Notes under the pieces: model-generated
Database searches by the model: none
Seen by the model: the letters and a program-made list of their open reading frames with translations, nothing else
Told to the model about the DNA's origin: nothing
In this document: piece after piece, positions 1 through 28,308 of the stretch
How the letters are laid out: the number at the start of each line of letters is the position of its first letter
Numbering within the stretch: position 1 is the stretch's first letter
Program-made: the position numbers and the translations under genes
NCBI RefSeq assembly: GCF_032444005.1
Contig: NC_091288.1
Coordinates: 220,720,001 to 220,784,000 of the forward strand
Source of the DNA: Ranitomeya imitator
Lineage: Eukaryota
Direction: 5' to 3'
DNA length: 64,000 nt

Positions 1-1105
1 CAGAATTCTGATTTGGCCGGAGAACGTCACATCTCAGGACTGTGTAATCTGGTGGAATAATGGGGAGGGGTGAACCCCGATCTTCTTATTATTGCAGATC
101 TGGCGTATTTCACCTCTGGGGATGTTTCGCCTCCAGCTCTGGGGACCTCGAACACATGAGAATGAGAACCTACAGTATGTGGGGCGGGGGAGGGGAGGCA
201 TCATCAGCAGAGGGGCTCAGTAAGAATCCACAAGGGTCGCTCTGTCAAGTTTGGATCTTTTATTTGATGAATTTCACAAACAATTGTCACAGAAGTAACA
301 GGACCCACACTCCTGGTTAATTCTACACATTTATTTTACGTTTTTTTGCCCAGTTCGTATCGGATTTTATCCTCCAGTTACTGCCAGAGTTGCATTCAGT
401 GCTTTTATGTTCTCTTCCAAGAGTATACTTTACAGAACAGCTGCGGAAATCAGCAGAATTGTGATTACAGCTCCGGATGTAATTAAAGTCCCATGCCCAG
501 TAATGCGCCATGTTATAGGGTCATCTGTATGACGAGCACAAGACCCCTCAGTAACAAAATGAACCTAGCTCACCATAGAAGTGTATCAGCCTCGGGGGTC
601 CAATTCCTCCAGGACCCCTCACATATGTGCATCTTAGGCTCCTACATGATCAGTAAATGTTGTTGCCGTTTAATAGCCCACTGTGTGACGACCTTCCTCC
701 CGAACTCTTGGGTTTTTGTCTTACTCATAAATGGCAACTGCCTCCCAAAAAGGATGAGATCCCCACATGTCAGCAATTCTCTGCAAAGGCCCAAAACGTC
801 TGAGAATCCAATGATTCTGGAAAGATTCAGACCCCGGGTATCTCAGCAGGATAAAGACACGGAGGGCTGGAAAATGGGCCGGAGGGATACAACTATTCCA
901 GAAATGTTAAATAAGCTTCTCCAGGATGCAAATATGGGGTAAAGTATACCAATCTGGCCATCCGGGAAGGGCAGCTCCTATTAAGGGGATTCGCAAGGGA
1001 GACGGCCCTCGTCTTTGTCCATGTAATAGATGGGGTCAATTGATTTACCAGTCCTAAAGTCACGCACTCTCATGATAGCGGGGTCTTCTGGGATTCGTGC
1101 AGATT

Positions 1106-1111
1106 TTTATT
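1106..1111 (-). promoter_or_regulatory. Candidate polyadenylation signal of copy A
   Basis: AATAAA on the minus strand ~70 nt downstream of the stop codon. Confidence 0.3.
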
Positions 1112-1178: not shown

Positions 1179-1568
1179 TCAACGGAAGAACCTGGCCACG
1201 AGTGCAGAAAACCCCGTCTTCAGCAGAGAGACTGTCGTTGATGCTACCTCCGTAGCCACCGTCCTCTCCACTGCTGCCACCGCCGGCTGAGCCATGACGA
1301 CAGTCCCCCTGGCTGCAGCTGCCCCAACCACCCCATATATCCCAAGACCGGCAGTGACGCCCAACGTGACAGCGTTGCATGTGAAACGAGTGGTGTAACC
1401 GGAGCAAAACTTCTCCTGCTCCTCCTGAAGATGGGACGCCAGCTCTGCCTGAAGCTCGCTGTGATGAGACAGGTTGGGACCTAGGAGAGAGTCTTTGAAC
1501 TTTGCTGCAAGTTCTGCCGACTTCTCCGAGACCAGGGTCCTCATGGTTGATGGCAGGAGGTGATACGG
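1179..1568 (-). CDS. rnf112: Copy A terminal exon: helical stalk end plus hydrophobic/amphipathic tail
   Basis: PSTMRTLVSEK...EQEKFCSGYTTRF...GVTAGLGIYGVVGAA aligns with copy B PSNMREVV...EVEKFCSEYSKRF. Confidence 0.82.
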   Translation of the reverse strand, partial: PYHLLPSTMRTLVSEKSAELAAKFKDSLLGPNLSHHSELQAELASHLQEEQEKFCSGYTTRFTCNAVTLGVTAGLGIYGVVGAAAARGTVVMAQPAVAAVERTVATEVASTTVSLLKTGFSALVARFFR

Positions 1569-4500
1569 CTATGTAAAGAAGAGAGGAACACAAGATGAGA
1601 TTCATCACCAAGGTCTACTTTCCATGATCACAACCTCCAGGCTTAGGACCTACATGCCCGACATCTCACATGGCTTCACCCAAACTGAGGTCTCCACCAG
1701 TGACGCGTGTTTCGCAGTTTTACACGTGACTCACCTGATTCTTCAGGAATTCCTGGAGTTCATCTTTGATGCTTTCAAGGACCTTTTGGTTTTTGATGGC
1801 ATAAAACATCTGTGAGGTGAAAAATGAACGACAGATACAGCAAGGAAGGATGGTGTGGATGGTGTTATAAAGACTGGCTAGTTGGATATTGATCGTGGTC
1901 TCCCCAACACCTTGACACATTACTCCACAAGTCTCAAGTAACGGACACACCCATAATATGAAGATGAAAGATCACCCTTCCTCCTTGTTCCCTGCGCTGC
2001 TCCAGGCTCGGCTGCTTCGGTCTCATCAGCTCCACTGCTGGCACAGTGTGGCGCACGATGAAGTGATGTCATTGCACGCCCGCTGAGTCAGAAGGAGAGA
2101 GGGAGTGATGTGAGAGGGACACTCTCTCCTCCATCACTGCTTTCAATTGTATGGGCGTCTAAGATGCTGATAAGTTAAATCAGCAATAAGGGGAGGCGCC
2201 TGGTCCCTCAGTGGCCGTGTGGTGTGCCGCTATTAGCGGCACCCCACTGGCTCAGCTGGAGACCCCTGGAGGAGCGGGGATCCTAGACAGCTGCCTGGTC
2301 TGCCTGCCCCTAATTCCGGCTCTGCCTACCTTGGAAGCTCCTCTCTCTTCTGTGCCTCTTCCATCATATCTCCTCATCTGAAAAACTCTGCCCACTCCCC
2401 TGGTTCTTCCACCAGCTCTCCTCACTCTCCTGTGGCCTCCAGCACAGGAGTTTTATGGGCCCTAAGATCCCCTGATAATTAGCGGGAGCAGACAGTCTGA
2501 TGTCATGGTGGGACATCTTTTTTTCACAGCTTATTCTAGATGAAAGACGACATCACTCACCTCCATTGGGGTAGAGAAACCATAGTTCTGCTTCTCCAGA
2601 ACATCAACAAAGACCTAAATAAGAAACGGTCATTAGAGGGTTAAACATAGTCAATTGGAAACACAATAGTCCAATAATAGATATGGTTAAATAGCCCCTA
2701 CTCGACAGCAGTGCTGTCACTACTCACCCCTCCATGACACCCCTGCTGTCTATCAATGCGGACCCCCATAACACCCCTGCTGATATAGCCCTACCCCTGA
2801 ACCACAGCCCTGCTCCTCAGCCACATCCCCTTACGCAGCCCTGCCCATCAGCCACACCTCTGCTTGCACTGCCTGTCCCCCTCAGCCACACCCCTGCTGA
2901 TGTAGCCCTGCCCCTCAGCCACACCCCTGCTGACACAGCCCTACCCCTCAGCCACACCCCAGCCCCTCAGCCACACCCCTGCTGACGCAACCCTACCCTT
3001 AGCCACACTCCTGCTGACACAGCCCTGCCCCTCAGCCACACCTCTGCTTGCACTGCTTGTCCCCCTCAGCCCACCCATGCTGATGTAGCTCTAACCCTCA
3101 GCCGCACCCCTACTGACACAGCCCTGTCCCTCAGCCACACCACTGCTGACACAGCCCTGCCCCTCAGCCACACCTCTGCTTGCACTGCTTTTCCCCCTCA
3201 GCCCACCCCTGCTGATGTAGCTCTAACCCTCAGCCGCACCCCTGCTGACACAGCCCTGCCCCTCAGCCACACCCCAGCTTATGTAGCCCTGCCCCTCAGC
3301 AACACCCCTGCTGACACAACCCTGCCCCTCAGCCACACCCCTTCTGAAGCAGCCCTGCCCCTCAGTCACACCCGTTTATGCAGCCCTGCCCCTCAGCCAC
3401 ACCCCTGCTGATGTAGCCCTGCCCCTCAGCCACACCCCAGTTTATGTAGCCCTGCCCCTCAGCCACACCCCTGCTGATGTAGCCCTGCCCCTCAGCCACA
3501 CCCCAGTTTATGTAGCCCTGCCGCTCAGCCACACCCCTGCTGACACAGCCCTGCCCCTTAGCCACACCCCTGTTCATGTAGACCTGCCCATCAGCCACAC
3601 CCAAGATAACGCAGCCCTGCCCCTCAGCCACACCCCTGCTGGCATAGCCCTGCCATTTGCCACACCCCTGCTGGCACCGCCTGCTCCTTTTGCCACTTTC
3701 CATCTGTCACTGCCCTCCTTTCTGCCTCACCCCTGCTGTCACCACCCTGTTCTCCATGATGATAGTAATATGTTGGGGATACATTATGGAGAAATCATAA
3801 AATTCCAACTTTACCTGTAACATGGAGGGAATGTGGCTGCAGGTCAGAACGTCTCCCCTCGCATTCATCTTAATCCGATGCCACACTCCCCGCACCACAT
3901 CTGCCACGTACATTCTCAGATTCTCCTGGAAATCCTCGTCCATATCTGTCAGGAAGATGTTACAGGTGGTAGGTAAGGGGTGATCATAATACATGAACTA
4001 ACTCTAGGATCAGGACTTAGGATAAGACATTAAAACCATCACGTTACAGGCTAAAAACGTGACACCGTCCTCATGATGTAACCTCCCCCTAACCCAGTGT
4101 TCATCCACCATCCCGCACTCTGCAGAATGGAACTCCTCTAACGCAGGACAGGCTTCTGCAAAGTTTTTGATAGAAAAGCATTATGGCCTATAATTTGGGG
4201 GCATTTCTCACAAGCAAAATTTCTTATCTCCCTCCATCATGGATCAGTTTCCAATCTCCCCAGTAAGGTCACCATCACCACCACGTCGAAGGACCTCACC
4301 TTGAAGTCTTCCTTGGCTTTCTCCAGTAATTCCTTTTCCTGGATGCGGCAGTAGGAAGCAACGAGTGTGACTGCTCTTCAGACCCCATAAAACTTTGGGG
4401 TAGCTATGGCCTTTCTGGAGTTTCTAACATGGATATAAGAACTTAGATAAATCAAATCTCATATTCCGAAAACAGGGAGGGAAAAGCAGGAGACGGAATA

Positions 4501-7500
4501 TAAAAGTCTGTAGCATTGGGCTACGGTGAGCTATTTGGTGGTTGTCTTGGTCAATAGTCTAAGATGTCCATCAGTCCTCATGGACCACACGGCATGAGCT
4601 GCCACCAAGGCCAATGCCCCGAAAAGTCCAATGTCACCATGGCAGAGCTCATACTGTATGGACTGAGATGTTTGGAGGATGCCTTCATGGATTTTCATAC
4701 CTCGATTTCCCGACTGATATAAAACCGAGCTGCGTCTCTTCCACAGTTGCCGGAGTCATGCCAGTCTCTGATTAAAATGTCCAGGAACTGAGTTAGCATA
4801 CAGAAGGGAGCAAGATACATGAAATGTCAGTAATAGGAAATATGGAGCTACAGAGAATACAGAAACCTACATCCTAAATCACGCCCTCTACCCACCACGA
4901 TCATCAACGGATTACAGGCCGGTCAGGGTCACCTACCTGCAACCGCTCAGAACCAAACTCCTCTCCCATGTTGAGGTACATCTGAAAGAACATAGGTTGT
5001 ATCATTCATTACTTATCATCATTAGTCTGGAATGTTGCACCACAGAACACACTTACACTCATCTTGAAGGACCTCAGAATTTACTGTCAGTCATTTTATG
5101 GAGGACACGACCAATTGGAGGAACCCTCTCTTCACCTTATTCACGATCAATCCCAAATGAGCCTTTTTATGGAGGACACAACTTTTCAAAGGAGCTCCAT
5201 TTCATGCCCATTCTGATGGACGTCACGATCAAACCTACATAAGCCATTTTTTTTTGAGGACACAACCTATTGGAGCCTTCTATTCATCCCTGTCCAGACA
5301 GTCTAAACTATGCCAGCCATTGTATAGGAGGAGACAACCTATTGGAGGAACCCTCTTTTCACATGAATTCTGAAAGACCTCCTTACATAGGTTGAGAACA
5401 GCTCCCCGTCCATCAAGGTCTCCCGCTCTCCACCAATTGTACATTTTGTCACTAATTTAACTATAACCCCCAACGTTAAGTGTATTGTCTGTTTAGGACA
5501 TCATCCGGCCCTGGTATAAAGCTGTTATAGTGTCGGCCATTACAACCTCTTGTGGTCGGTATTCCACAGTCTCACTGCTCAACTGTAAAGAACCCTTTCC
5601 TATTTAGCTGCCGGAATCACCTTTCTTCACCTCGTGATATATTCTGGAGTATATCGGACAATCGAGCACATGTGACTCATTTCATAGAAAACCTTACAGT
5701 AGAAGGTCAAAGCCCAACTTTCCATACACATCCAAATCTGGTCCAGTAATGATACTTTCCCAGTTCTGTCTGCCAGTAGATCCTGTTCTTCAGTTATCCA
5801 AAATATGGGTCCATTATCAACCAGACATAGCAAACCAGTCCTGCAGCCTTGTAGAGTGACTAACATATCGGCTCCATATTTCACTAGGGAGTAGTCATTT
5901 ATCTCTAAATGCCAGTTACATTCCTCTTTAGATCATCCGCGTGGTCACAATTTCATGTCTGCCTCCAAAGTATCTAGTCTGCTCTTGAAGCTTCAAGAAC
6001 CGATCACATCCCATCAAGAACTAGACCTGGATATTAGATTTCCAAAATATATTTTAAGGTTTAGTATAGAATCTACTCGTATTCTGAGGAACCAACAAGT
6101 CCTCAGTCTCATCTCTATATATTCGGAGCACCAAGAAATAATTCAGTGACTAGCCAGTCCTACATCCCTGTAGAAACCATTCAAGAACCCATACACTCCG
6201 ACGGGCCCTACAGAAACACGTCGATTCAGGACCTCTTCAGTATAACGCTCATCCCGATCCTAACAAGGTCCATCTGTATGGCTGAAGGAATTGTAGACCA
6301 GTGATCTACCAAATGCCCACACAACACTCACCTCCATGTAGTCCAGTTCGGTCTCCTTCAAACTTCCAGCCACGTTGAAAACCTACAAGATTCGACAGAT
6401 TAGCCATTGAATCCTTCATTTTTTTTATGGACCCAGTAAGATCTATTGAAAATAGTAGAGCCCTCACCAAATGAGAGCTGAGTAGCATGGACAATGCCGA
6501 AAGCTTAATGCAGCTCTCCCGATCACCCTCGATATCCAGTGAACCCTCTGTATCCAAAACATAGACCACTACCTAGAGGTACGGAACAAAGTAACATGCC
6601 AGAGACTTTATGAAGGAGCAGAAATCTCAGATAAGACGGACGCCCTTCCAGAGATGTGATTCCTGATCTCACCTTCTCTCCCTTCTGGCCCACCATGAAG
6701 GGTTTATTCCAGATCCAGATCCCCTTCGTAGTGCTGTCGATGCCACATTTCCATTCGAAGCCTTGGAGGGGTTCATCATTTGCTCCAAGACTGACGTCCT
6801 CGCCCTTCTCCTACAAGAAGTTATAAAGGAGTCTGGTAACATCAAGCGGAGCTATTGGATTATTCAGGTTAGAGGAGCAAATAAAGGGTCTTATCTCATT
6901 GGCGGGCCACCCTCAAAATCCTCACCGGTCAGTCGTTGTATGAGACCTACCAAGACCCCAATTCAGATCAAGACCCTAGAATGAAGCTGACTGGTGTGCC
7001 ATGGAGAATTGAGCGTCACTTGACACCCCCAGATACCCGCGGGCATCCACCAATATCCATGGTAATCACCGTACAATGGCGCCGGTTATCCCAACACGTA
7101 GTAAACATTTGTAATAGCTTTGTTATGAAATGACCTGCGCATGATAAGTTTATGCCCCCTGGCCTCCTCTCACCTGACTCTCCAAGGCCCTCAAGATGTA
7201 ATTCATCAGGAACGACTTCCCGCGCCGCTTTTCTCCGATGACGCAGAGCAGGTAGACGGGATAAGTGGACAGATAGCTGTTCATGAAGCAGTTGTAGACC
7301 ACCGACTCATCCAGGTGTAAGCGGCCATTGCCATCCGTCCACACCAGCTGCACCGGGTAACCCTGCTCCGGAGGTTGCAGACATTCCTGTAGAATAACAG
7401 ATGGTGGTAACGCCAAGATCTCTTTTATCTGGATTTTTTAGCTTGCTGGTCACATTGTTACCTGCTCTATGGTTTTGTCCTGGATTCCCTTTTGGATCTT

Positions 7501-9259
7501 GTCGATGAGGTTCATCAGACGATAGTCGGGAGTAATCTGATTTCGGGGACACTGCGTCCTGCACTCGGGGCAGAGGTAACCATATGGGTGTGGGGTGCTC
7601 CAGTGTGTGGTAATACAGTTTCGGCAGAAGGTGTGCCCGCAGGCGATGGACACCGGATTCTGCAGGTCATCAAGGCACACTGAGCAGGTGATGTCCTCGG
7701 CTAGGACCTGGAAGCCAACGGCACCATCTGAAGGTAGCGGGGGGTCATTACTGAAGAAAACAGAGCACCAATTCAGCTCGAGTCACAACAGGCAGTTGGC
7801 TACACCGTTACGCAGGTGATCGAGCGGGACAGGGCGGCTATGCCAGCGATCGTGTGGGGAAAAGGGGCTACGCCAGCGATCGAGCTGGGCAGGCGGGCTA
7901 CGCCAGTGATTGAGCGGGGCAGGGGGCTACACCAGTGACCGAGAGGGGCATCGCCAGCAATCGAGCGGGACAGGATGGTTATGCCAGCGATGGAGCGGTT
8001 TTTCCCAGGGATGGAGCAGGACAGGGCGGAAACGCCAACGATCGAGCAGGACAGGGCGGATATGCCAGTGATCAAGTGGGACAGGGCGGTTATGGCAGCG
8101 ATCGAGTGGCTTTTCCCAGCGATGGAGAGAGACAGGGCAGCTACGCCAACAACGGAGCGGGACAGGGTGGCTTTCCCCAGCGACGTAGTGGCAGAGACAC
8201 GGTGAATACATCCATCATGGAGCATGAGAAGGCAACTATGCTGGCGATGGAGTGGGATAGCGGAACTATGCAGGGCATGGAGCAGGGCAGTGCAGCTATG
8301 CTGGTAGCAGCAAAAGGCAGTGCGGCTATGCTGGCAACGGAGCAGAAGAGTGCACCGTCTTAGGTGACAGAGCAGGGCAGGGCAGTGCAGCTATGCTGAC
8401 GGCAGAGAAGGGCACTGTGGCTATGCTGGCGGCATTGTGGCTATGCTGGCGGCATTGTGGCTATGCTGGCGGGATTGTGGCTATGCTGGCGGGATTGTGG
8501 CTATGCTGGCGGCATTGTGGCTATGCTGGTGGCATTGTGGCTATGCTGGCGGCATTGTGGCTATGCTGGCTGCATTGTGGCTATGCTGGCGGCATTGTGG
8601 CTATGCTGGCAGCATTGTGGCTATTCTGGCGGTGGAGCAGAAGAGTGCACCATCTCAGGTGGCAGGGCAGTGCAGCTATGCTGGCGGCATTGTGGATATG
8701 TTGGTGGTGGAGCAGAAGAGTGCACCGTCTCAGGCGGCAGGGCAGTGCAGCTATGCTGACAGCATTGTGGCTATGCTGGCGGTGGAGCAGAAGAGTGCAC
8801 CGTCTCAGGCGGCAGGGCAGTGCAGCTATGCTGGCGGCATTGTGGCTATACTGGCGGTGGAGCAGAAGAGTGCACCGTCTCAGGTGGCAGGGCAGTGCAG
8901 CTATGCTGGCGGCATTGTGGCTATGCTGGCGGTGGAGCAGAAGAGTGCACCGTCTCAGGTGGCAGGGCAGTGCAGCTATGCTGGCGGCATTGTGGCTATG
9001 CTGGCGGCGGAGATGACGATACTCTCCTACCACCCGGACTGCATATTTCAGGGTGTCTGTCCTCTCCGTCTCCGGTGTACGGACTGTCACTGTGGTCACC
9101 GGCCTCTCACCTCACAGTCTCGGCGCTCTCGCTGGGTCTGTCCGCTCGCTCTCTCCGTGGCCTCCTTCTCACCCTCTTCCTCTGGGGCTCAGTCTGTGGC
9201 TGCGCCGGCCTCAGTGAGGTTTGCGGCCTCTCTGCCCCCCTGTGCCTCCTGGCCTCCAT
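1179..9259 (-). CDS. rnf112: RNF112/neurolastin-like RING E3 ligase-GTPase, copy A (13 exons, ~616 aa, intact)
   Basis: Exons (minus strand, all GT-AG and phase-consistent): 9259-9111, 7750-7462, 7386-7174, 6810-6673, 6572-6468, 6382-6332, 4981-4937, 4787-4701, 4423-4300, 3945-3815, 2614-2561, 1809-1735, 1568-1179. Sum is 1851 nt = 617 codons including stop. RING CSVC..CGHTFC..C..CPEC; G1 GEKRRGKS; G2 STTKGIWIW; G3 DTEG; G4 IRDW; LLPHPG; DMDEDF. Domain order matches RNF112. The symbol denotes family; orthology is not established. Exon 1 is the least certain exon. Confidence 0.88.
2760..3690. repeat. 33-bp C-rich minisatellite in copy A intron 10
   Basis: Unit CAGCCCTGCCCCTCAGCCACACCCCTGCTGACA repeated ~25-28 times, degenerate at the edges. 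Confidence 0.9.
5383..5625 (-). mobile_element. CR1-type LINE 3' end fragment (copy A intron 6)
   Basis: Minus strand decodes, with an indel, to RKGFFTV-AVRLWN..PQEVVMADTITAF...DDVL, followed by a CR1-like 3' UTR (..cttgatggac....tctcaacctatgtaa). Confidence 0.7.
7174..7386 (-). CDS. rnf112: Copy A exon 3: GTPase P-loop
   Basis: VQLVWTD...LCVIGEKRRGKSFLMNYILRAL; ttctacAG acceptor, CAG|GTGAGA donor. Confidence 0.9.
7462..7750 (-). CDS. rnf112: Copy A exon 2: C3HC4 RING finger
   Basis: EDITCSVCLDDLQNPVSIACGHTFCRNCITTHWSTPHPYGYLCPECR; acceptor ttttcttcAG (phase 2), donor CAG|GTAACA. Confidence 0.9.
7810..8175. repeat. 30-bp minisatellite in copy A intron 1
   Basis: Unit ~GAGCGGGACAGGGCGGCTATGCCAGCGATC, ~11 degenerate copies. 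Confidence 0.8.
8230..9010. repeat. 20-bp and 75-bp composite minisatellite in copy A intron 1
   Basis: GGCATTGTGGCTATGCTGGC x~11, plus 75-bp units that embed the same 20-mer. Confidence 0.9.
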
Positions 9260-10805: not shown

Positions 10806-11077
10806 TTAAGATCTCTGCTTGCTGTCGATCAGTGAATTATGTCTTATGGCGGACTTCACATTGTTATACTGCCACCTGCTGCTGCCATTGAGTATTGCAA
10901 CTGAAAAGGCAGATGGAGACATAGTGACACACAACAAACTGCAGCTCTGCATTAGTACTAAACCATATCTATCCCACAATGCACTGCATAATTATTCATC
11001 ATTCAACAAAGTCATTAAATACAAATATGTATGTGATATCTGATATCTGACAACAAGGAGGGGAATAAGACTGTAGT

Positions 11078-17000: not shown

Positions 17001-18276
17001 CTCTGTATACAGGGAGCTCCCCCTAGTGGTGGCTGCAGACAGGATCTTATCATGTATCTCTGTATACAGGGAGCTCCCACTAGTGGTGGCTGCAGACAGG
17101 ATCTTATCATGTATCTCTGTATACAGGGAGCTCCCCCTAGTGGTGGCTGCAGACGGGATCTTATCATGTATCTCTGTATACAGGGAGCTCCCCCTAGTGG
17201 TGGCTGCAGACAGGATATTATCATGTATCTCTGTATACAGGGAGCTCCCCCTAGTGGTGGCTGCAGACGGGATCTTATCATGTATCTCTGTATACAGGGA
17301 GCTCCCCCTAGTGGTGGCTGCAGACGGGATCTTATCATGTATCTTTATATACAGGGAGCTCCCCCTAGTGGTGGCTGCAGACAGGATCTTATCATGTATC
17401 TCTATATACAGGGAGCTCCCCCTAGTGGTGGCTGCAGACAGGATCTTATCATGTATCTCTGTATACAGGGAGCTCCCCCTAGTGGTGGCTGCAGACAGGA
17501 TATTATCATGTATCTCTGTATACAGGGAGCTCCCCCTAGTGGTGGCTGCAGACGGGATCTTATCATGTATCTCTGTATACAGGGAGCTCCCCCTAGTGGT
17601 GGCTGCAGACGGGATCTTATCATGTATCTTTATATACAGGGAGCTCCCCCTAGTGGTGGCTGCAGACGGGATCTTATCATGTATCTCTATATACAGGGAG
17701 CTCCCCCTAGTGGTGACAGCAGACAGGATGTTATCATGTATCTCTGTATACAGGGAGCTCCCCCTAGTGGTGGCTGCAGACAGGATCTTATCATGTATCT
17801 CTGTATACAGGGAGCTCCCCCTAGTGGTGGCTGCAGACGGGATCTTATCATGTATCTCCGTATACAGGGAGCTCCCCCTAGTGGTGGCTGCAGACAGGAT
17901 CTTATCATGTATCTCTGTACGCAGGGAGCTCCCCCTAGTGGTGACTGCAGACAGGATCTTATCATGTATCTCTATATACAGGGAGCTCCCCCTAGTGGTG
18001 GCTGCAGACGGGATCTTATCATGTATCTCTATATACAGGGAGCTCCCCCTAGTGGTGGCTGCAGACAGGATATTATCATGTATCTCTGTATACAGGGAGC
18101 TCCCCCTAGTGGTGGCTGCAGACAGGATCTTATCATGTATCTCTGTATACAGGGAGCTCCCCCTAGTGGTGGCTGCAGACAGGATCTTATCATGTATCTC
18201 TGTATACAGGGAGCTCCCCCTAGTGGTGGCTGCAGACAGGATCTTATCATGTATCTCTGTACGCAGGGAGCTCCCC
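11078..18276. repeat. 57-bp satellite, block 1 (~126 units), with a CTCF-like motif in each unit
   Basis: Unit ATGTATCTCTGTATACAGGGAGCTCCCCCTAGTGGTGGCTGCAGACAGGATCTTATC; occasional 54-bp variants. Confidence 0.97.
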
Positions 18277-19089
18277 TGTTATGATCTGGTGGTTAGGACA
18301 AATAGTGGACCTGGTATTTAGAGCACCCGTAAAGACCTGATAGCATATTAATACAGGACAAGCTCTTGGAAGTGGAACCTCTGCTGACCGCAATCCCTAA
18401 TCCTATCACGCACACTAGAAATAGCCGTGGAGCGCTCCTATCATGACCTAGGCGCCTCGTCACAGCCTCAGAACTAGCTAGCCCTAGAGATATGAAAAAT
18501 AAGCCTATCTTGCCTCAGAGAAAATTCCCCAAAGGAGAAGGCAGCCCCCCACATATATTGACTGTGAGTAAGATGAAATCACAAACACAGAGATGAAATA
18601 GATTTAGCAAAGAGAGGCCCGACTTACTAAACAGACAGAAGATAGGAAAGGTCACTTTGCAGTCAGCAAAAAACCCTACAAAAGCCACACAGAGAGTGCA
18701 GGGAAAAATACCTTCCGCACCGACTAACGGAGCGGAGGCGCCCCTCTGCGTCCCAGAGATTCCAGCAAGCAAGGCAAAATTCACATAAGCATGCTGGACA
18801 GAAAAAATAGCAAACAAGAAAAAAGCAAAGCAAAACTTAGCTTTTGCTGGAGGAAACAGGTAACCAGGAAGATCCAGGAGCGAACTAGACCAATGCTACA
18901 ACATTGACAGCTGGCATCGGACAAGGATCCAAGTGGAGTTAAATAGAGCAGCCCACTAACGAATTAGCCTCGTCACCTGTAGAAGGAAACTCAGAAACAC
19001 CCACAGGCATCAGAGAAAGTCCATGGACCGAACCAGCCAAAGTACCATTCATGACCACAGGAGGGAGCCCGAAAACAGAAATCACAACA
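18277..19089 (-). mobile_element. Solo LTR (probably Ty3/Gypsy) inserted in the satellite
   Basis: 813 bp, termini TGTTATGAT...ATCACAACA (TG..CA, 8/9 inverted match); flanks CTCCCC/CTCCTC (6-bp duplication, 1 mismatch); TATA-like CTATTTAA on the minus strand near 18945; no coding sequence. Confidence 0.8.
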
Positions 19090-21405
19090 CTCCTCCTAGT
19101 GGTGGCTGCAGACAGGGTCTTGTGTATCTCTGTATACAGGGAGCTCCCCCTAGTGGTGTCTGTGGACAGGATCTTATGTATCTCTGTATACAGGGAGCTC
19201 CCCCTAAGTGGTGTCTGTGGACAGGATCTTATCATGTATCTCTGTATACAGGGAGCTCCCCCTAGTGGTGACTGCAGACAGGATCTTATCATGTATCTCT
19301 GTATACAGGGAGCTCCCCCTAGTGGTGGCTGCAGACAGGATCTTATCATGTATCTCTGTATACAGGGAGCTCCCCCCTAGTGGTGGCTGCAGACAGGATC
19401 TTATCATGTATCTCTGTATACAGGGAGCTCCCCCTAGTGGTGACTGCAGACAGGATCTTATCATGTATCTCGTATACAGGGAGCTCCCCCTAGTGGTGAC
19501 TGCAGACAGGATCTTATCTTGTATCTCTGTATACAGGGAGCTCCCCCTAGTGGTGACTGCAGACAGGATCTTATCATGTATCTCTGTATACAGGGGGCTC
19601 CCCCTAGTGGTGGCTGCAGACAGGATCTTATCATGTATCTCTGTATACAGGGAGCTCCCCCTAGTGGTGACTGCAGACAGTATCTTATCATGTATCTCTG
19701 TATACAGGGAGCTCCCCATAGTGGTGACTGCAGACAGGATCTTATCATGTAACTCTGTATACAGGGAGCTCCCCCTAGTGGTGACTGCAGACAGAATCTT
19801 ATCATGTATCTCTATATACAGGGCGTTTCCCCTAGTGCTGACTGCAGACAGGATATTATCATGTATCCATGTATACAGGGAGCTCCCCCTAGTGGTGGCT
19901 GCAGACAGGATCTTATCATGTATCTCTGTATACAGGGAGCTCCCCCTAGTGGTGACTGCAGACAGGATCTTATCATGTATCTCTATATACAGGGAGCTCC
20001 CCCTAGTGGTGACTGCAGACAGGATCTTATCATGTATCTCTGTATACAGGGAGCTCCCCCTAGTGGTGGCTGCAGACAGGATCTTATCATGTATCTCTGT
20101 ATACAGGGAGCTCCCCCTAGTGGTGGCTGCAGACAGGATCTTATCATGTATCTCTGTATACAGGGGGCTCCCCCTAGTGGTGGCTGCAGACAGGATCTTA
20201 TCATCTATCTCTGTATATAGAGAGCTCCCCCTAGTGGTGACTGCAGACAGGATCTTATGATGTATCTCTGTATACAGGGAGCTCCCCCTAGTGGTGTCTG
20301 CAGACAGGATCTTATCATGTATCTCTGTATACAGGGAGCTCCCCCTAGTGGTGACTGCAGACAGGATCTTATCATGTAACTCTGTATACAGGGAGCTCCC
20401 CCTAGTGGTGGCTGCAGACAGGATCTTATCATCTATCTCTGTATATAGAGAGCTCCCCCTAGTGGTGACTGCAGACAGGATCTTATCATGTATCTCTGTA
20501 TACAGGGAGCTCCCCCTAGTGGTGACTGCAGACAGGATCTTATCATGTATCTCTGTATACAGGGAGCTCCCCCTACAGGTGGCTGCAGACAGGATCTTAT
20601 CATGTATCTCTGTATACAGGGAGCTCCCCCTAGTGGTGGCTGCAGACTGGATCTTATCATGTATCTCTGTATACAGGGAGCTCCCCCTAGTGGGGGCTGC
20701 AGACAGGATCTTATCATGTATCTCTGTATACAGGCAGCTCCCCCTAGTGGTGACTGCAGACAGGGTCTTGTGTATCTCTGTATACAGGGAGCTCCCCCTA
20801 GTGGTGTCTGCAGACAGGATCTTATGTATCTCTGTATACAGGGAGCTCCCCCTAGTGGTGACTGCAGACGGGATCTTATCATGTATCTCTGTATACAGGG
20901 AGCTCCCCCTAGTGGTGGCTGCAGACGGAATCTTATCATGTATCTCTGTATACAGGGAGCTCCCCCTAGTGGTGACTGCAGACGGGATCTTACCGTGTAT
21001 CTCTGTATACAGGGAGCTCCCCCTAGTGGTGGCTGCAGACGGGATCTTACCGTGTATCTCTGTATACAGGGAGCTCCCCCTAGTGGTGGCTGCAGACGGG
21101 ATCTTACCGTGTATCTCTGTATACAGGGAGCTCCCCCTAGTGGTGGCTGCAGACGGGATATTATCGTGTATCTCTGTATACAGGGAGCTCCCCCTAGTGG
21201 TGGCCGCGGACAGGATCTTATCACGTATCTCTGTATACAGGGAGCTCCCCCTAGTGGTGACTGCAGACTGGATCTTATCACGTATCTCTGTATACAGGGA
21301 GCTCCCCCTAGTGGTGACTGCAGACAGGATCTTATCATGTATCTCTGTATACAGGGAGCTCCCCCTAGTGGTGACTGCAGGCAGGATCTTATGTATCTCT
21401 GTATA
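19090..21405. repeat. 57-bp satellite, block 2 (~40 units)
   Basis: Same unit as block 1, more degenerate, with 1-bp indels. Confidence 0.95.
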
Positions 21406-22124
21406 TAGGAGCCATATAGAGATACATAAGCCAATGTGTAACTGGGTGAATAAGACAGGATTTGGTGCTCTGTATCAGAACACGTATAAACTTTTATTAT
21501 ATAATTTATTAGTACACAAAATAAACAATATTTTAATTTTAAGAAAAATTGTCCGACAGATATTATTGTTTTTAACATTCAATTGATACAAAATTGTCAA
21601 CAACCTATAAATCATATATGTTATCGTTTTCTCTATCAATATTTAGTTTTATTTACTGCAAGTTTAATAAATTAATGAAAATCTCTTGGAGTCACAGACG
21701 CGATATCTGGAATTACACGGTACACGGACCGCCAATGCTGGATGTGTTCCAGACGTCTGGGAATCCTGAGAAAATCTCACCCCATAGGGGACAAGTGACA
21801 GCAGCGCAGGATCACGCCCCAATAATGAGAATGGAAGACGTGGGAACATCTGAGCGGGCGCTCCGCCGGCCCTGACCTCGCTCATCATGATGGGCGTCCT
21901 GTTACTCCTCTATGAAAGTCTTATCTGTTTAGCGCCCCCTAGAGGACACAGATCCAGTGCATCCTATTCAGTCATATCGGAAGATCTGCTTTGGTCTCCT
22001 AAGAACATGAAATGGCCTCAACGGTCCAGAAAAGCTAATGAAGACATCACTCTACAATCTTGATGGTAGTTGCCACTTTTTTGGGCTTATGTCTCCTTTG
22101 GGGTCTGATGATGGCGGTCACTCT

Positions 22125-22628
22125 TCACTCCGCTTTGGGCACCAGCTTTTGGGTGTCTTCAGGCGTTGAACCATTGCTATTACCTTGGTCATCGGGCATC
22201 TGATCCTTCTTCTTCGCTATATGCCCAATAATCCCCCCCACACCTCCTCCAACTCCTGTCCCAATAGCCCCTCCGACGGACCCTCCGACCGCCCCGCCGA
22301 TTATCACCGCCTCCGTAGCCAGGACTGTTCCAGCCACGGCTGCTCCCACGATTCCTCCCGCCAAGCTGAGGATCCCTCCACCCACCGCACACCCGATCCC
22401 CACCGCGCACTTTGTGAAGCGCTTGGAGTATTCGGAGCAGAATTTCTCCACTTCTTGGTCCAGTAGAGCCTTCATCTCGCAGATGAGATTTTTCCTCGCG
22501 GTGTCATTGCTGCCCCTCAGATTCTGCTCGTACTCCTGAAGGAGCCGCAAGGCCTCCTCGCTGACCACCTCCCTCATATTGGAGGGCCTGACCTTCAGCA
22601 CCTTGATAGGAGAAGACGAGCTGGGAGC
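22125..22628 (-). CDS. rnf112: Copy B terminal exon: Gly-zipper membrane hairpin and acidic tail
   Basis: AVGIGCAVGGGILSLAGGIVGAAVAGTVLATEAVIIGGAVGGSVGGAIGTGVGGGVGGIIG...EDTQKLVPKAE*. Confidence 0.9.
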   Translation of the reverse strand, partial: APSSSSPIKVLKVRPSNMREVVSEEALRLLQEYEQNLRGSNDTARKNLICEMKALLDQEVEKFCSEYSKRFTKCAVGIGCAVGGGILSLAGGIVGAAVAGTVLATEAVIIGGAVGGSVGGAIGTGVGGGVGGIIGHIAKKKDQMPDDQGNSNGSTPEDTQKLVPKAE

Positions 22629-25600
22629 CTGAGGAGGACACGAGAAGAGAAGTTACAGTTCATGGTCTATGACCACAGCCTGAGAAACATGCCGCCATAC
22701 CCGCTAGCTCCGGATACAGAACATATCCCCCCAGGACGAGCGCTCTTACCTTATTTGTAACAAAATCCTGGAATATTTTCACCGTGATCTTCAAGTTTTT
22801 GTGGTTTTCAAGGGCATAGAACATCTGGAGGAAGAGATCGAGGAGTTAATGTGGTGACCGAAGACGAGGAGACTCATCCCATCCTGTATGTCAGATACCG
22901 GGGGGCGAGAGCTCATAACTGAGGATAAACGATACGACCATGGGAAGATGGACGGGAATCATCTTATGTGTCAGACTGGATCTTATGCTTCTTGGAATGT
23001 TTCAGAAATATGTATCCTGAGTGTTTCCTGTATGTGAATGACTCGGGACTGGACACCGGGGAGAGCCGGGCCCCCGACGGCCACGAGTCATGCAGATTAG
23101 GGGGTCACCTTGATTTTGTGGATTGTAACACGCTGCCTCTAGTGGACAATATAGGATATGACACCATTACCTCTATAGGGGAAGCAAAGCTGAAGTTTTC
23201 TTGCTGCAAAGTACTGACGAAATCCTGAAAAATAAACACAGGAGAGAGAAGGGTTAACAAAAGAAAAGACATATATGTAATAAAACATACAGTGGCCGAG
23301 AAGGTAAAACCTGCTGATTGCCCGATCCTCCATGTCGGCAGGATCACGGCGACTCCAAAACTGCTCAGTTTATTTTTTTTATTTAGGTGATAAAAAAAAC
23401 ATTTGGACTCCGTATCTACATTTTGCATTTTCTTCCTGATCACTTTTAGTCCTTTATTGCCCGTGATAACCCGCTGTGCGGGGAGAAGAGGACTCGGTTA
23501 CTCTGATGAGAGTAGAGTTTTTTTTTTTTATAATTGAGGGGGAGGCATTAACATTGTCAAAGATGTGCGCTATCATTGATTCCGGGGTGCCATGTGTGCC
23601 TTGCCCGGGTTCCGGTAGCCCAGAATATGCCGCTATCCTTTCTTTTCCTGTTTTTTAGATCCTGGCCGGGTCTTCTCCTCGCTGCGCCGTCTGCTCTCGG
23701 CATTAAAGCCTCCTCTTCACCTAATCTTTAGTCCTGACACCCGTCGCTCATATTATTCCTCTTTCTGCATCCAGTAAAAAGGGTATTGATGCCACATCAC
23801 GACCCCATGTAGCACCTGAGCCATCTAATGCCCCTCTTAAAGGGATTTGTAACAGAAAAGTCAGGGTTCCTCCCACCACGCCATCATTAGTGGATAATAA
23901 GGGGGAATTTTGGACCACATTTCTTAACCGTAATGGGTTTTATCAATTTACAAGACATGATGTGTGAGGAGACTCTACGCCGACAGGTCCATAGTGCGGG
24001 CGCCCTAAAGTCGCAGAAAACGCCATATACCGACCCGAGAATCGCCAGCAGAACACTTATTAACATTTCATGCCCAACCTTCAGCATTCGGCCCAGCTGG
24101 CCACACGTGATCCTCTCTCCATGGACATCGGTTTTACGGTGGAGCCAAACTTCCTCCACGAGGTTGGAGATGTATGTGGTCAGGTGGCTCCTGAAATCAT
24201 CGTCCATGTCTGTGAAGAGACGCAATAATCATCACACTGGAATATACACGTATATCCTACCGGAAATTAACGGGTGGGAGCAGTCCCAGCGTCTATTTCT
24301 CCCCCCTCCCGCTTGCATCTGGCTGTTTGTGACGGATGGAGGGCATAGGATGGCGCCCATATAACGGTGGAGCAATATTTCCATTGATGGTTTCCCTCAT
24401 GGCTCCATGTGATCAGTCTGTAGAGGACAGTCCCTCTAATTCACGGCTTACCTGATTGCCGCCCTTCACTGGATCTCAGGAAGGTTTTCCCCGGGTGAGG
24501 CAGGAGGAAGCCGCTCGCGGACGGACTGCGCAGAGTCTCCAGCACACGGCGGTATGTCGCGCTCTTCCGCAGCTTCTACAACAAGACAAAGTGCAACTTT
24601 CCATCTCCAGTGTCAGGTTCGTACACCTCCCGGGATGGCCGATACCCACCCAAGACTTTATTCTCGCAGTCATGTGTTGGAGACTTGTAGCGCCCCGAGC
24701 GTGATCAAAGTTTGGTGAAAAAACGTCAAAATACAGAACAATGCAGTTTGTAAACGGCAGCAGCAAAAACATCTTCAACAATTGGTGACCATTAACAATA
24801 AAAGACATTTTGGAAATCGTGATAATCTGCAATTCGGCACAAATGTTGGCCCCGTTGTTGCCACCACAGCCGGACAGTCCTAGATTACTATCAGAACTCT
24901 GTCGTACCTCCGTCTCGTGCTCCATGTAGGACTTCGCCGCGTCTCGACCACAGTCGTCGGGGTTATGCCAATCACGAACCAGAATATTCAGGTGCTAAAA
25001 TGTAGAAGACAAAAAAATGGAGAGATGCAACCATTGGGAGATGCAGGATGTCAAAGGATGATGGGGACACCAGGTATCTGCTCTGCTCCTAATTTTCAGG
25101 CACGGTGACTCCTTTGGTTGTCCATTGCTTGCTACTGGGGCTCTGGTGGAGAGGACAATACTCAACCTCACAATGGCTGACCTTAGCCGTGGTCCTTCAT
25201 CTACACATCACCAGAGTGGACATAGGAGATGCCACAAGCTCGACCAGAAATGACGGCTACAGTAAGGTGCCAATAAGTTGTGGTCATGATTTTGGGAAAT
25301 AGCTGCAGACTTTGACATCAGATCAATGAGGTCATCAAGATGTCAGGAATGAACACTATCAAAAACTGCACTCTAGAGATCCTGCAAAACTTTCCCTAGA
25401 GGAACGGTAAGAATGAGTGGCGAGCGACTGACAGAGGAGATCACCTGTAGATATTGTAGACAGAAGGATTCCCCTGTGAGCTCCGACACGTGGAGATACA
25501 TCTGAAAAGACACAAATACATCTCGATCGATCCAGTCCATCACCGTAGAAATGAAACTCAAGGTTACATGGGCAGAAGCATCTTCATTCCACTGATACAT

Positions 25601-28308
25601 TGTAGTGACACAATGTAACGATGGTCCATGATACATTCAAGGACTGACGTCATGGAGAATAACACAACTGATGCTTGAAGAGATGTCCTCGACTTCCGTA
25701 CCTCCAGATAATCCAGCTCTGTTGTTTTCAAGCTTGCATTAATGTTGAAGATCTGAGGACACAAACAAACGTTACATCAGGAGATGTTCATGAAGAGGAT
25801 GGACGCCCCACACCCTCCACCATCCAGCACCAAGACGTCACACAAAATTACATCAACCCCCACTAGAGAGACTGAGTCACACAAATATAGCAATCCTGAC
25901 ATGGACGGTGGGCTACATCAATATCTAGGGGGTCTATACAAACTGCATAGTGCAGCCACTCTTACCTTTTATGTGGTTTGATTACCAGCGATTAGTGTGC
26001 CAAAACAAAACTTTATATTGTGGTCATACATGTGTATCCCAAACCCCAAAATAGCAAGGTTTGATGGAGTAAAGAGGTGAGTGGGCATGTATATTCAGAG
26101 CTCCTCGAAGACCTCACATACCAGGTAGGAGCTGAGGAGCATGGACAAGGCGGACAGCTTCACACAGGTCTCCCTATCACTTTCGATGTCCAATGAACCC
26201 TCTGTGTCCAGGACAAACACGGCCATCTGTACAGAGGAGAAAGAAGGGTAACATCATAACCAAGGACCATGGCGTCGGCTGGGAAAGTGCTTCTGTAAAT
26301 GACATGACGGGGTAGCTACAATAAGATCTGACATTCATCCATTATTAACAGAGATCCAAGATGGAAGCGATAATCGTTATATTGATCTTACCGGCGGCTC
26401 ACAATAGAGTACGGGGAGAGACCTGATGAGAGACATACAACGTGTCCTTTACCTTTTCGCCGTTCCTCTCTAGGATAAAGGGTCTATTCCACAACCATAT
26501 CCCTTTAGTGATACTGTCTGTCCCGGATCGCCACTCAAAACCATGGAGGGGCTCGTCCTGTTCCCCTAGGCTGATCGGCTGCCCCTTCTCCTACACAGGA
26601 AAAAAAGCTAAATTTATCAAATCATAAGGAAACTATTTTCTCAATAGCAAGGATGGATCTCCATCAATAACAGATCTCTAAATGCAAGCCCCCCTCCCAG
26701 GGTAAGCATGTGCAGAACTCCTCTATAAGAACATTACAATGGTAACTTTGGGTTGGAGCAGATACAAGCATGACGCCCCTCTAACTCTTGACTTGAGGGG
26801 CGATGATATGAACCCATTTGGTCTCCTGTGACATTGGATTTTGCAGGTTATGACTACTCACCAGGCTGTAGAGTGCTCTCAGAATATAGTTCATCAGGCT
26901 GGACTTTCCTCTTCTCTTCTCTCCGATCACGCAGATAAGACACAGGGGGTAATCTGAGATCTTACTGTCCAAAAAGCATCCATCAAGAACAGATTCATCC
27001 AGCCCCATTTTGTTGCTTGCATCGGTATAGACCAGCTGGACGGCACGTGGAGGAGCCTGGGAGGACATTAGTCATATTCAATAATGATGGAGAAAAGCAG
27101 ATCATTGCATCTCATATCTATGAAGTAGACTGAAAAGAACGCCTAATGGTCTGCCATCTGTGATTAACCACAGGCTCCCCCTCCACCATATCAAATGAAC
27201 TTCCATCTAAAACATTGTCACCGGTGGTATTAACTGAAGACTGGCATGGCCCAAGTACCCATGGCGTTCCCTACTATTCTCTAATAACCCAAATGATACA
27301 ACAAAGGCATGGGGCCATAATAAAGGTCTGTGCCATACATCTTTATGAACGTGTGGACTTTGTACCAGATATAACCAAGTGTTTCTCTGTATTTGGCATT
27401 AAATTATCATCATTTTAAAAGCTCTAAAAACTCACTTACCTACTAGTTTGGATTGTTATTTGTTGACAGCTAGCTAAACCATTGGTATGAATTTTCAGGT
27501 ATTGCAACCAACTCTGTGTGTGAACAGTGGCATGGTTGAAATACCCATGGCGGTCCCTAGAGTTTTTTAATAAGCCACATAATACTCTTATCTGCGTTAT
27601 GATAAGTTAACACAAGTCTGTGCTGTAAATCTCATCAATGTGTAGACTTTGTACACGCTATAACCATTATTACTCAGCGTTTATCATTAAGGTATAGAAG
27701 GGCACACATGCTACAGACCGTGCAAGTTTCTTTCATACTTTCACCTACCAGTTTGGACTGTTCTTCTTTGACAACCAGCTGAACCTTTGACACCAGTTGC
27801 TGCAGGCGGTAGGCAGGTATGAGCTGATCTCTCGGGCAGACTTTCCTGCATTCTGGACAGCGATACCCAAAGGGTTGTGGGGTGGACCAGTAGGATGAGA
27901 TGCAGGGTTTACAAAAAGTGTGTCCGCAGGTGATCGATACCGGGTCATGGATCTCATGGAGACAAATGGAGCATGTGATATCGTCTTTAAGTTTGGAGAA
28001 ATGTGCAGACCCTTCGTTTGGCATGGTCGCCCTAATTCACAGAGATATCAGGAGGGAAGAAAAGGAAAGTTACAAGTCTCATCACATAAATTATGTGAAA
28101 ACAGGGAGTAAAGTGCAAGCAAAGCAGCCGAAAACAGTAACACCAAAGCTGTGACGGAGCATAGATCAGATGATGCACAGGAAAGTACAAACATGGACGA
28201 CAATGTGTGATAACTGGTCACATGACCCTGGAATAAAAGGATCCAAAGACTATAAACACGATGTGAAAAGTAAAGGATGACTTACGGCTTAGAGCGGCTG
28301 CTTCCCAT
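22125..28308 (-). CDS. rnf112: RNF112/neurolastin-like RING E3 ligase-GTPase, copy B (13 exons, ~608 aa, intact)
   Basis: Exons (minus strand, GT-AG, phase-consistent): 28308-28286, 28031-27749, 27056-26862, 26590-26453, 26226-26122, 25752-25702, 25501-25445, 24994-24908, 24575-24452, 24209-24079, 23224-23171, 22824-22750, 22628-22125. Sum is 1827 nt = 609 codons. RING; GEKRRGKS; SITKGIWLW; DTEG; VRDW; Gly/Ala-rich membrane hairpin at the C-terminus typical of RNF112. Intron positions and phases match copy A. Confidence 0.92.
26862..27056 (-). CDS. rnf112: Copy B exon 3: GTPase P-loop
   Basis: AVQLVYTD...LICVIGEKRRGKSSLMNYILRAL. Confidence 0.9.
27749..28031 (-). CDS. rnf112: Copy B exon 2: C3HC4 RING finger
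   Basis: DDITCSICLHEIHDPVSITCGHTFCKPCISSYWSTPQPFGYRCPECR. Confidence 0.92.

What the first reader, a model, noticed from the sequence alone, without database searches (positions are those of the whole stretch)
98..28308. Tandem pair of intact, anciently diverged RNF112-like RING-GTPases: a possible amphibian E3-ligase/GBP-like gene family
Seen in sequence: two complete 13-exon genes with identical intron phases. The G3 exon is 28/35 identical, the exon after G4 only 19/41, and I see no obvious intron similarity, so the duplication is old and both copies have stayed open. Established: mammals have one RNF112 (brain-enriched, dynamin/atlastin/GBP superfamily), and GBPs act with ubiquitin ligases in cell-autonomous immunity. 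Inference: a lineage-expanded, diversifying set of proteins fusing a TRIM-type RING to a GBP/atlastin-like GTPase could be an undescribed amphibian innate-immune effector family rather than neuronal neurolastin.
Basis: partly seen in the sequence, partly recalled or inferred. Interest (0 to 1): 0.75.

Follow-up and report, generated by a model that had tools for sequence, protein, structure and literature searches.

The report
Ancient frog RNF112 gene pair
The window holds two intact neighbouring poison-frog genes for RING-finger/GTPase membrane proteins; they are the two old frog copies of the known gene RNF112 (neurolastin), already labelled as such in many frog genomes, and nothing here shows an immune role.

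Summary
Two minus-strand genes of 13 exons each, gene A at 9259-1179 and gene B at 28308-22125, have identical intron phases and only GT-AG introns. The G3 exon is 28/35 identical and the exon after G4 is 19/41. The introns show no similarity.

Spliced RNA contigs from four studies confirm all 12 introns of gene B.

Both genes encode a C3HC4 RING, an atlastin/GBP-type GTPase, a helical middle region and a hydrophobic anchor, which is the RNF112 (neurolastin) architecture.

Database census and trees show two old frog lineages:
- The A-type includes Xenopus rnf112, the protein crystallised as PDB 9jju.
- The B-type is annotated "RNF112-like".

Both lineages occur from Bombina and Xenopus to Neobatrachia. 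The same B-then-A tandem order is found in Eleutherodactylus coqui.

B keeps the ancestral ends, an MG start of myristoylation type and an acidic dileucine tail. A has new ends, a polybasic N-terminus and a GRFFR helix.

Both genes are under purifying selection (omega about 0.15). The immune-effector idea has no support here, and the expressing tissue is unknown.

The genes are real but ordinary, with a modest evolutionary point of interest.

The parts
1179..9259 (-). Gene A, A-type RNF112 (ortholog of Xenopus rnf112): 13 coding exons, 616 aa
   Evidence: Exon map from tblastn with P0188 and P0013, refined by a splice-site and phase search. All 13 exons hit A-type proteins best.
9111..9259 (-). 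A exon 1: ATG plus a polybasic N-terminus (..PQRKRVRRRPRRER..)
   Evidence: 78% identical to the N-terminus of Anomaloglossus P0188. Donor GTGAGA, ends 2 nt into a codon. A polybasic cluster is present in 15/19 A-type proteins and in no B-type or non-anuran protein.
7462..7750 (-). A exon 2: C3HC4 RING
   Evidence: Pfam zf-C3HC4_4 E=9.8e-14, above the gathering score.
7174..7386 (-). A exon 3: start of the GTPase domain, G1 GEKRRGKS with the arginine finger
   Evidence: PDB 9jju (X. laevis RNF112) E=4.3e-25. R195, R196, K198 and S199 equivalents are kept.
6673..6810 (-). A exon 4: G2/switch I region
6468..6572 (-). A exon 5: G3 DTEG
   Evidence: 28/35 identical to B exon 5. 100% identical to P0188.
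6332..6382 (-). A exon 6
4937..4981 (-). A exon 7
4701..4787 (-). A exon 8: G4 (LIRDW)
4300..4423 (-). A exon 9 (LLPHPGK)
   Evidence: 19/41 identical to B exon 9.
3815..3945 (-). A exon 10
2561..2614 (-). A exon 11
1735..1809 (-). A exon 12
1179..1568 (-). A exon 13: end of the middle domain, one hydrophobic segment of about 21-30 aa, C-terminal ..LLKTGFSALVARFFR
   Evidence: Hydropathy. A G[RK]FF[RQ] end is present in 17/19 A-type proteins and in none of the others.
22125..28308 (-). Gene B, B-type 'RNF112-like': 13 coding exons, 608 aa, transcribed and spliced
   Evidence: Exon map. All 12 introns are confirmed by spliced contigs in 4 runs from 4 studies. All 13 exons hit B-type proteins best: Dendrobates and Phyllobates 89-100% in all 13, 92-100% in 11.
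28286..28308 (-). B exon 1: 23-nt micro-exon MGSSRSK(P), an N-myristoylation-type start
   Evidence: Spliced to exon 2 in runs X1, X9 and X19, with a loose end in X2. Identical in Dendrobates, Phyllobates, Anomaloglossus and E. coqui. It fits the G-{EDRKHPFYW}-x2-[STAGCN]-{P} pattern.
27749..28031 (-). B exon 2: C3HC4 RING
   Evidence: Pfam zf-C3HC4_4 E=3.9e-11.
26862..27056 (-). B exon 3: G1 GEKRRGKS
   Evidence: PDB 9jju E=5.6e-18.
26453..26590 (-). B exon 4: G2 region
   Evidence: Pfam GBP E=8.9e-6.
26122..26226 (-). B exon 5: G3 DTEG
25702..25752 (-). B exon 6
25445..25501 (-). B exon 7
24908..24994 (-). B exon 8: G4 (LVRDW)
24452..24575 (-). B exon 9
24079..24209 (-). B exon 10
23171..23224 (-). 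B exon 11
22750..22824 (-). B exon 12
22125..22628 (-). B exon 13: end of the middle domain, a Gly-rich hydrophobic region of about 55 aa (residues 71-126 of the exon; long enough for a two-helix hairpin), acidic tail ending ..EDTQKLVPKAE (DxxxLV)
   Evidence: Hydropathy. [DE]xxxL[LIVM] occurs in the last 30 aa of 34/36 B-type, 15/24 non-anuran and 0/19 A-type proteins.

Best explanation
The window carries the conserved anuran RNF112 tandem pair of a dendrobatid frog; an earlier scan note names the genome as the mimic poison frog. The B-type gene lies upstream and the A-type gene about 12.9 kb downstream on the same strand. Both are co-orthologs of the single RNF112 (neurolastin/ZNF179) of other tetrapods.

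Shown: each encodes an N-terminal C3HC4 RING (E3 ligase module). Each also encodes an atlastin/GBP-type dynamin-superfamily GTPase with intact G1-G4. Both keep the P-loop arginine finger that the X. laevis study found indispensable for GTP hydrolysis. Most GTPase-dimer contact residues are kept as well.

Inferred from full-length homology to the crystallised X. laevis protein: both are membrane-anchored GTPases that dimerise through the G domain on GTP hydrolysis, and they couple this to RING-dependent ubiquitination on organelle membranes.

The paralogs differ mainly at their ends. B keeps the ancestral ends: a Gly-2 myristoylation-type start on its own micro-exon, a long Gly-rich hydrophobic region, and an acidic dileucine-type tail. 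A has replaced both ends: a polybasic, NLS-like or lipid-binding first exon, a single hydrophobic segment, and a GRFFR amphipathic C-terminus. I infer that the old duplicates have divided or shifted subcellular targeting. I do not infer a new kind of effector.
For: - Gene structure, phases and intactness.
- Spliced RNA for all B introns.
- Domains: RING and GBP Pfam hits on exons and above the gathering score on the near-orthologs P0153 and P0188.
- Best solved relative: X. laevis RNF112, 9jju.
- Catalytic and interface residues from PMC12012479 are conserved in both genes.
- Census: more than 30 anuran species carry proteins labelled RNF112 or RNF112-like that fall into an A group and a B group.
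- Tree: the anuran clade has SH-aLRT 100, the A clade 100 and the B clade 97. Salamander, lungfish, coelacanth and amniote RNF112 fall outside.
- A and B are 45-50% identical to each other but at most 43% to any non-anuran RNF112.
- Every exon of A hits A-type proteins best and every exon of B hits B-type best.
- The same order, strand and roughly 13.8-kb spacing occur on E. coqui contig WNTK01001377.1.
- The two kinds of protein ends separate cleanly by lineage.
- Purifying selection: omega 0.14 and 0.16.
Against: - The timing of the duplication is not settled. An AU test does not reject a tree joining the A-type with the fish outgroup, which would mean an older origin (p=0.24). The salamanders' place in the best tree does not follow the species tree.
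- Myristoylation, dileucine sorting, NLS function and membrane topology are read from motifs and hydropathy only.
- B has His at the position of X. laevis R351, where an R351E mutant failed to dimerise.
- No tissue or induction data could be obtained.
- Gene A's transcription was not checked.
- Synteny with MFAP4 rests on an earlier scan note outside this window and on my memory of the human locus.
Confidence: 0.82

Rival explanations
1. The B-type lineage (or the whole frog family) is a pathogen- or interferon-responsive cell-autonomous immune effector family, a GBP-like GTPase fused to an E3 ligase, and not a neuronal housekeeping protein.
For: Extra B-type copies are lineage-specific, and some recent duplicates sit on long branches: Phyllobates P0190 0.34 vs 0.03, Mantella P0172 0.27 vs 0.02, Pseudophryne P0165 0.41 vs 0.12. 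There are RING-less long forms in Xenopus and parallel expansions in turtles. Gene B is expressed at appreciable depth in runs from four studies. The GTPase keeps the GBP/atlastin arginine finger.
Against: Gene-wide omega is about 0.14-0.16 for both genes. The main A and B lineages are close to one gene per species and follow the species tree. Neither proximal promoter has an ISRE core. The held literature offers no immune expression evidence. The domain set is that of RNF112, not of GBPs or TRIMs.
Confidence: 0.08
2. The duplication is much older (before the tetrapod or lobe-fin radiation). One type would then be the only true RNF112 ortholog, and the other a paralog lost everywhere except in frogs.
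For: The AU test does not reject the A-type grouping with Amia (p=0.24). The A stem branch is long, 0.38 against 0.14 for B. B shares both kinds of ends with non-anuran RNF112.
Against: The best tree unites all anuran sequences with SH-aLRT 100. A and B are more alike than either is to any outgroup. This scenario needs independent losses in coelacanth, lungfish, salamanders and amniotes. The tandem position fits a local duplication.
Confidence: 0.12
3. One of the two copies is a decaying or silent duplicate whose open frame is only apparent.
For: Gene A was not tested against RNA here.
Against: Both frames are open over 13 exons with canonical splice sites. Omega is about 0.15 for both. Orthologs of both are kept across roughly 200 My of frog evolution. 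B is spliced exactly as modelled. Transcript-length Logan contigs exist for A-type proteins in other frogs.
Confidence: 0.03

Closest known systems
Xenopus laevis RNF112 (rnf112.L, LOC432253; PDB 9jju-9jjx; PMC12012479)
   Same: It is the ortholog of gene A: same clade, 59-62% identity, same polybasic N-terminus, and same single hydrophobic segment with a GRFFR amphipathic end. G1-G4, the arginine finger R195 and most dimer contacts are also kept in gene B.
   Different: Gene B is the other paralog, about 46% identical. It has an MG start, a longer Gly-rich hydrophobic region and an acidic dileucine tail, and it carries His at the R351 position.
Mammalian RNF112 / neurolastin / ZNF179
   Same: Same architecture: RING, dynamin-superfamily GTPase and C-terminal membrane segment.
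   Different: Mammals have one gene. According to PMC12012479, human and mouse proteins have His or Glu in place of the arginine finger and show weak GTPase activity. Both frog genes keep the arginine. No therian sequence was in my protein sets, so this comparison is indirect.
Atlastins (ATL1-3)
   Same: They are the next-best solved relatives of the G1 exon (E about 1e-4 to 1e-5). They share a GBP-type G domain, a three-helix middle domain and a C-terminal membrane anchor.
   Different: Atlastins have no RING. Sequence similarity is far lower, and they are ER fusogens with two defined TM helices and an amphipathic tail.
Guanylate-binding proteins (GBP1-7)
   Same: The G domain belongs to Pfam GBP (PF02263), and the P-loop arginine finger is shared.
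   Different: The frog genes lack the long C-terminal helical GBP domain and a CaaX box. They have a RING and a membrane segment instead, and there is no evidence of interferon control.
TRIM E3 ligases
   Same: The RING scores best with the TRIM-style zf-C3HC4_4 model.
   Different: Pfam detects no B-box, coiled coil or PRY/SPRY, so the tripartite motif is absent.

Membership tests
RNF112 / neurolastin | N-terminal C3HC4 RING finger | tested here: met
   zf-C3HC4_4 E=9.8e-14 (A) and 3.9e-11 (B), both above the gathering score. All eight Zn ligands are visible in the exon 2 translations.
RNF112 / neurolastin | Dynamin-superfamily GTPase domain of the GBP/atlastin type with G1-G4 | tested here: met
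   GEKRRGKS, DTEG and RD motifs are present in both genes. Pfam GBP E about 1e-30 on the near-orthologs P0153 and P0188. PDB 9jju E=4e-25 and 6e-18 for the G1 exons.
RNF112 / neurolastin | Three-helix middle domain after the GTPase domain | tested here: inconclusive
   Exons 10-13 align along the full length of the X. laevis and X. tropicalis proteins. No structure was predicted, so the fold is inferred from homology.
RNF112 / neurolastin | C-terminal hydrophobic membrane segment | tested here: met
   Kyte-Doolittle 19-residue peaks are 1.65 (A, one segment) and 2.05 (B, a region of about 55 aa).
RNF112 / neurolastin | Groups with RNF112 orthologs in a tree | tested here: met
   The A clade contains Xenopus rnf112. 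A and B together are sister to the salamander, lungfish, coelacanth and amniote RNF112 sequences. Window exons were placed by best hits, not as a joined row.
RNF112 / neurolastin | Syntenic locus (next to MFAP4) | not testable with these tools
   An earlier scan note puts an MFAP4 cluster just left of the window. That DNA is outside my window. The same tandem order in E. coqui was tested.
RNF112 / neurolastin | Brain-enriched expression | not testable with these tools
   Gene B is transcribed, but run and sample names are coded.
Immune GTPase effector families (GBP/IRG-like) | Interferon or pathogen inducibility | tested here: inconclusive
   No ISRE core lies within about 400-500 bp upstream of either ATG, and there are only 4 core matches in 64 kb. 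No induction data were found.
Immune GTPase effector families (GBP/IRG-like) | Rapid, diversifying evolution | tested here: not met
   Nei-Gojobori omega is 0.14 (B) and 0.16 (A) against E. coqui, with dS 0.65-0.82, near saturation. Site-wise tests were not done.
TRIM | RING followed by B-box and coiled coil | tested here: not met
   There is no B-box or coiled-coil family hit on the exons or on P0153 and P0188.
GBP proper | C-terminal helical GBP domain (GBP_C), often with a CaaX box | tested here: not met
   Pfam finds only the N-terminal GBP domain. The proteins end in ..ARFFR and ..VPKAE.

The most novel reading that the evidence does not exclude
Frogs (and, separately, turtles) have turned RNF112 into a small birth-and-death family. 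Its B-type members, myristoylated and dileucine-sorted with a fully active arginine-finger GTPase, would act as RING-armed, GBP/atlastin-like effectors on endosomal or pathogen-containing membranes in cell-autonomous immunity. The A-type would keep a neuronal role.
Probability: 0.08. Interest if true: 0.75.

Novelty: new member of a known kind. Interest (0 to 1): 0.3.

Why it matters
For genome annotation, this is a routine pair of orthologs of genes already labelled RNF112 and RNF112-like in many frogs.

The modest point of interest is evolutionary. The "Xenopus RNF112" used as the structural model for the mammalian brain protein belongs to the frog paralog that has replaced both of its ends. 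The unstudied B-type paralog keeps the N-terminal MG start and the acidic dileucine tail shared with squamate, salamander, lungfish and Amia RNF112 (the MG start also in coelacanth).

Both frog paralogs keep the catalytic arginine that, per PMC12012479, human and mouse RNF112 lack. The pair therefore offers a natural experiment on how targeting signals direct a RING-GTPase membrane remodeller.

The immune idea remains an untested speculation.

Tried and rejected
- Literature. Searches for RNF112 with Xenopus, frog or tadpole, for 'rnf112.2', and for the full name found no paper on non-mammalian paralogs. One search was badly framed and returned only amphibian-disease papers. The supplement of a Ranitomeya imitator skin RNA-seq paper has no RNF112 entry.
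- Tissue of expression. Run, organism and sample names are coded, so gene B's expression could not be tied to an organ.
- More copies in the window. tblastn with all 239 family proteins against the rest of the window found nothing beyond one chance-level hit.
- Close-relative DNA for dN/dS. The Anomaloglossus loci carry no DNA because the file is too large. Dendrobates P0152 and X. tropicalis P0120 are not on record. E. coqui was used instead, with dS near saturation.
- Dating the duplication. An AU test was meant to exclude an older origin of the A-type, but it did not reject it (p=0.24).
- Joined model. The window genes were analysed exon by exon by reference, and the annotated near-orthologs P0188 (A) and P0153/P0152 (B) served as full-length proxies. 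For that reason no structure prediction was run.
No contig was taken for human, and no N stretch was filled.
Full report
**What is in the sequence**

ORF listing and a self-comparison of stop-to-stop segments showed two series of collinear, similar coding pieces on the minus strand. One series lies at about 1.2-7.8 kb and the other at about 22.1-28.0 kb. A 57-bp satellite separates them.

I used close database relatives as guides and searched for GT/AG sites that keep the frame. This gave two 13-exon models. Gene A runs 9259-1179 and has 616 codons. Gene B runs 28308-22125 and has 608 codons.

All 24 introns are GT-AG and no exon holds a stop. Every exon-length difference between the genes is a multiple of three, so the intron phases are identical.

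The G3 exon is 28/35 identical and the exon after G4 is 19/41. Overall the paralogs are 277/555 (50%) identical. blastn finds no similarity between any pair of introns.

**Transcription**

Contigs of four public runs from four studies were laid on 22321-28320. They contain all twelve gene B junctions at exactly the predicted coordinates. This includes the junction between the 23-nt first exon (MGSSRSK-) and exon 2. Exon depth is several-fold above intron depth.

The runs are therefore RNA, and gene B is expressed and spliced as modelled. Organism, sample and study names are coded, so the tissue is unknown. Its first exon is 78% identical to the N-terminus of an annotated Anomaloglossus protein, and the other exons are 83-100% identical to it.

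**What the genes encode**

Exon 2 of each gene is a C3HC4 RING (Pfam zf-C3HC4_4, E=1e-13 and 4e-11). Exons 3-4 hit the GBP N-terminal GTPase family. The near-orthologs P0153 and P0188 pass the Pfam thresholds for both domains and show no B-box, coiled coil or GBP C-terminal domain.

The best solved relative of the G1 exons is X. laevis RNF112 (LOC432253, PDB 9jju-9jjx), with E=4e-25 for A and 6e-18 for B. Atlastins follow far behind.

That structure comes from PMC12012479, which shows several things:
- a GTPase domain plus a three-helix middle domain;
- dimerisation through the G domain in the transition state;
- an indispensable P-loop arginine finger (R195), which human and mouse RNF112 lack.

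Mapped exon by exon, both window genes keep R195, R196, K198, S199, G235, DTEG, I272, E273, R276, L306, D307, L356, K384, D398 and D400. Gene B has His at R351 and Thr at E303. Both are thus expected to be active, dimerising GTPases. This is an inference from conservation.

**Family and orthology**

A full-library HMMER search with B's G1 exon gave 107 representatives. A profile word search gave 149 relatives. Cluster look-ups name them 'RING finger protein 112' or 'RING finger protein 112-like'. They come from more than 30 anurans, and also from salamanders, lungfish, coelacanth, Amia, squamates, turtles, alligator and echidna.

Gene A is closest to an Anomaloglossus protein (78%). Gene B is closest to Phyllobates (88%) and Dendrobates (85%) proteins, so the genome is a dendrobatoid frog.

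In an 88-protein maximum-likelihood tree, all anuran sequences form one clade (SH-aLRT 100). It splits in two:
- The A clade (support 100) contains Ascaphus, Bombina, Spea, Leptobrachium, Xenopus rnf112 (the crystallised protein) and neobatrachians.
- The B clade (support 97) contains Bombina, pipids, Rhinophrynus, pelobatoids and neobatrachians, plus extra sublineages: the Xenopus 'rnf112 gene 2' group, a Bufo/Hyla group and a Bombina/Discoglossus group.

All 13 exons of A hit A-type proteins best, and all 13 exons of B hit B-type best. A and B types are 45-50% identical to each other and at most 43% identical to any non-anuran RNF112.

The best reading is a duplication on the frog stem, which makes both genes co-orthologs of RNF112. 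This dating is not secure. An AU test does not reject a tree that joins the A-type with the fish outgroup (p=0.24).

**Arrangement**

On E. coqui contig WNTK01001377.1 the B-type gene (96102-111134) and the A-type gene (72020-82265) lie on the same strand. B is upstream and the gap is about 13.8 kb. The window shows the same layout with a gap of 12.9 kb, so the tandem order is conserved across hyloid families.

From memory, MFAP4 neighbours RNF112 in human. I could not test this because that DNA is outside the window.

**How the paralogs differ**

The differences sit mostly at the ends of the proteins.
- B-type: 18/36 proteins start with MG[NSGT]. The others start at the internal Met of exon 2, most likely because annotation missed the micro-exon. 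34/36 have [DE]xxxL[LIVM] in the last 30 residues.
- Non-anuran RNF112: these share both traits (12/24 and 15/24).
- A-type: none of 19 has either trait. Instead 15/19 have a polybasic N-terminal cluster and 17/19 end in G[RK]FF[RQ].
- Hydropathy: one hydrophobic segment of about 21-30 residues in A, against a Gly-rich region of about 55 residues in B.

So B is the conservative copy and A is the derived one. The A-type is the copy that carries the name rnf112 in Xenopus and was crystallised. I infer different membrane or compartment targeting. The motifs have not been tested.

**The immune hypothesis**

In favour: extra B-type copies are lineage-specific, some sit on long branches, and turtles show a parallel expansion.

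Against:
- Gene-wide dN/dS against E. coqui is 0.14 (B) and 0.16 (A), with equal dN.
- The main lineages follow the species tree.
- There is no TRIM or GBP C-terminal module.
- Neither proximal promoter has an ISRE core.
- The held literature has nothing on it.

I put this reading at about 8%.

**Limits**

Searches were run exon by exon by reference, and full-length work used the annotated orthologs. No structure was predicted. dS is close to saturation. The expressing tissue is unknown.

**Verdict**

The genes are the R. imitator members of an already annotated frog RNF112 / RNF112-like pair. The immune interpretation is unsupported. What remains of interest is the clean partition of ancestral and derived protein ends between the two old copies.

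Noticed in passing
window 11077-21409: A 57-bp satellite of roughly 180 copies (about 89-95% matches) fills most of the gap between the two paralogs. Read on the other strand, its unit contains CCACTAGGGGGAGCT, which by eye matches the CTCF consensus CCASYAGRKGGCRSY at 14 of 15 positions. Another reader of this scan flagged it (s1-295080).
   Followed up: partly
window 28554-58900: About 30 kb upstream of gene B consists almost entirely of different back-to-back satellites. They include 28-bp units (28554-29851 and 44101-45430), C-rich units of 46-58 bp (31.6-39.4 kb), 26-bp (40427-41562), 35-bp (45808-49216), 86-bp (49974-54554), 13-bp (54791-55988) and about 29-bp units (56.8-58.9 kb). Base skews are strong.
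   Followed up: no
window 59225-59569 and 61167-61350 (+): Two exons of a trypsin-family serine protease gene lie on the plus strand (Pfam Trypsin E=1.4e-16 and 7.6e-5). The rest of that gene was not modelled.
   Followed up: partly
window 8411-9012 and 2803-3673: Tandem repeats lie inside gene A's introns: 20-bp and 75-bp units in intron 1, and 33/66-bp C-rich units in intron 10. They produce long spurious ORFs.
   Followed up: no
window 43178-43310 and 43326-43603: Two runs of N (assembly gaps or masked sequence), left untouched.
   Followed up: no
P0129, P0169, P0034, P0057, P0059 (turtles); P0062/P0185 (echidna): Turtles carry several RNF112-like genes, some very long (1057-1200 aa). The echidna has two near-identical RNF112-like proteins. 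Copy-number growth of this family is therefore not confined to frogs.
   Followed up: partly
P0003, P0005, P0204, P0017 (Xenopus, Hyla): Some B-related frog proteins are annotated without a RING. They have longer, different C-termini ending in a classical single TM helix. It is unclear whether these are real RING-less paralogs or incomplete gene models.
   Followed up: no
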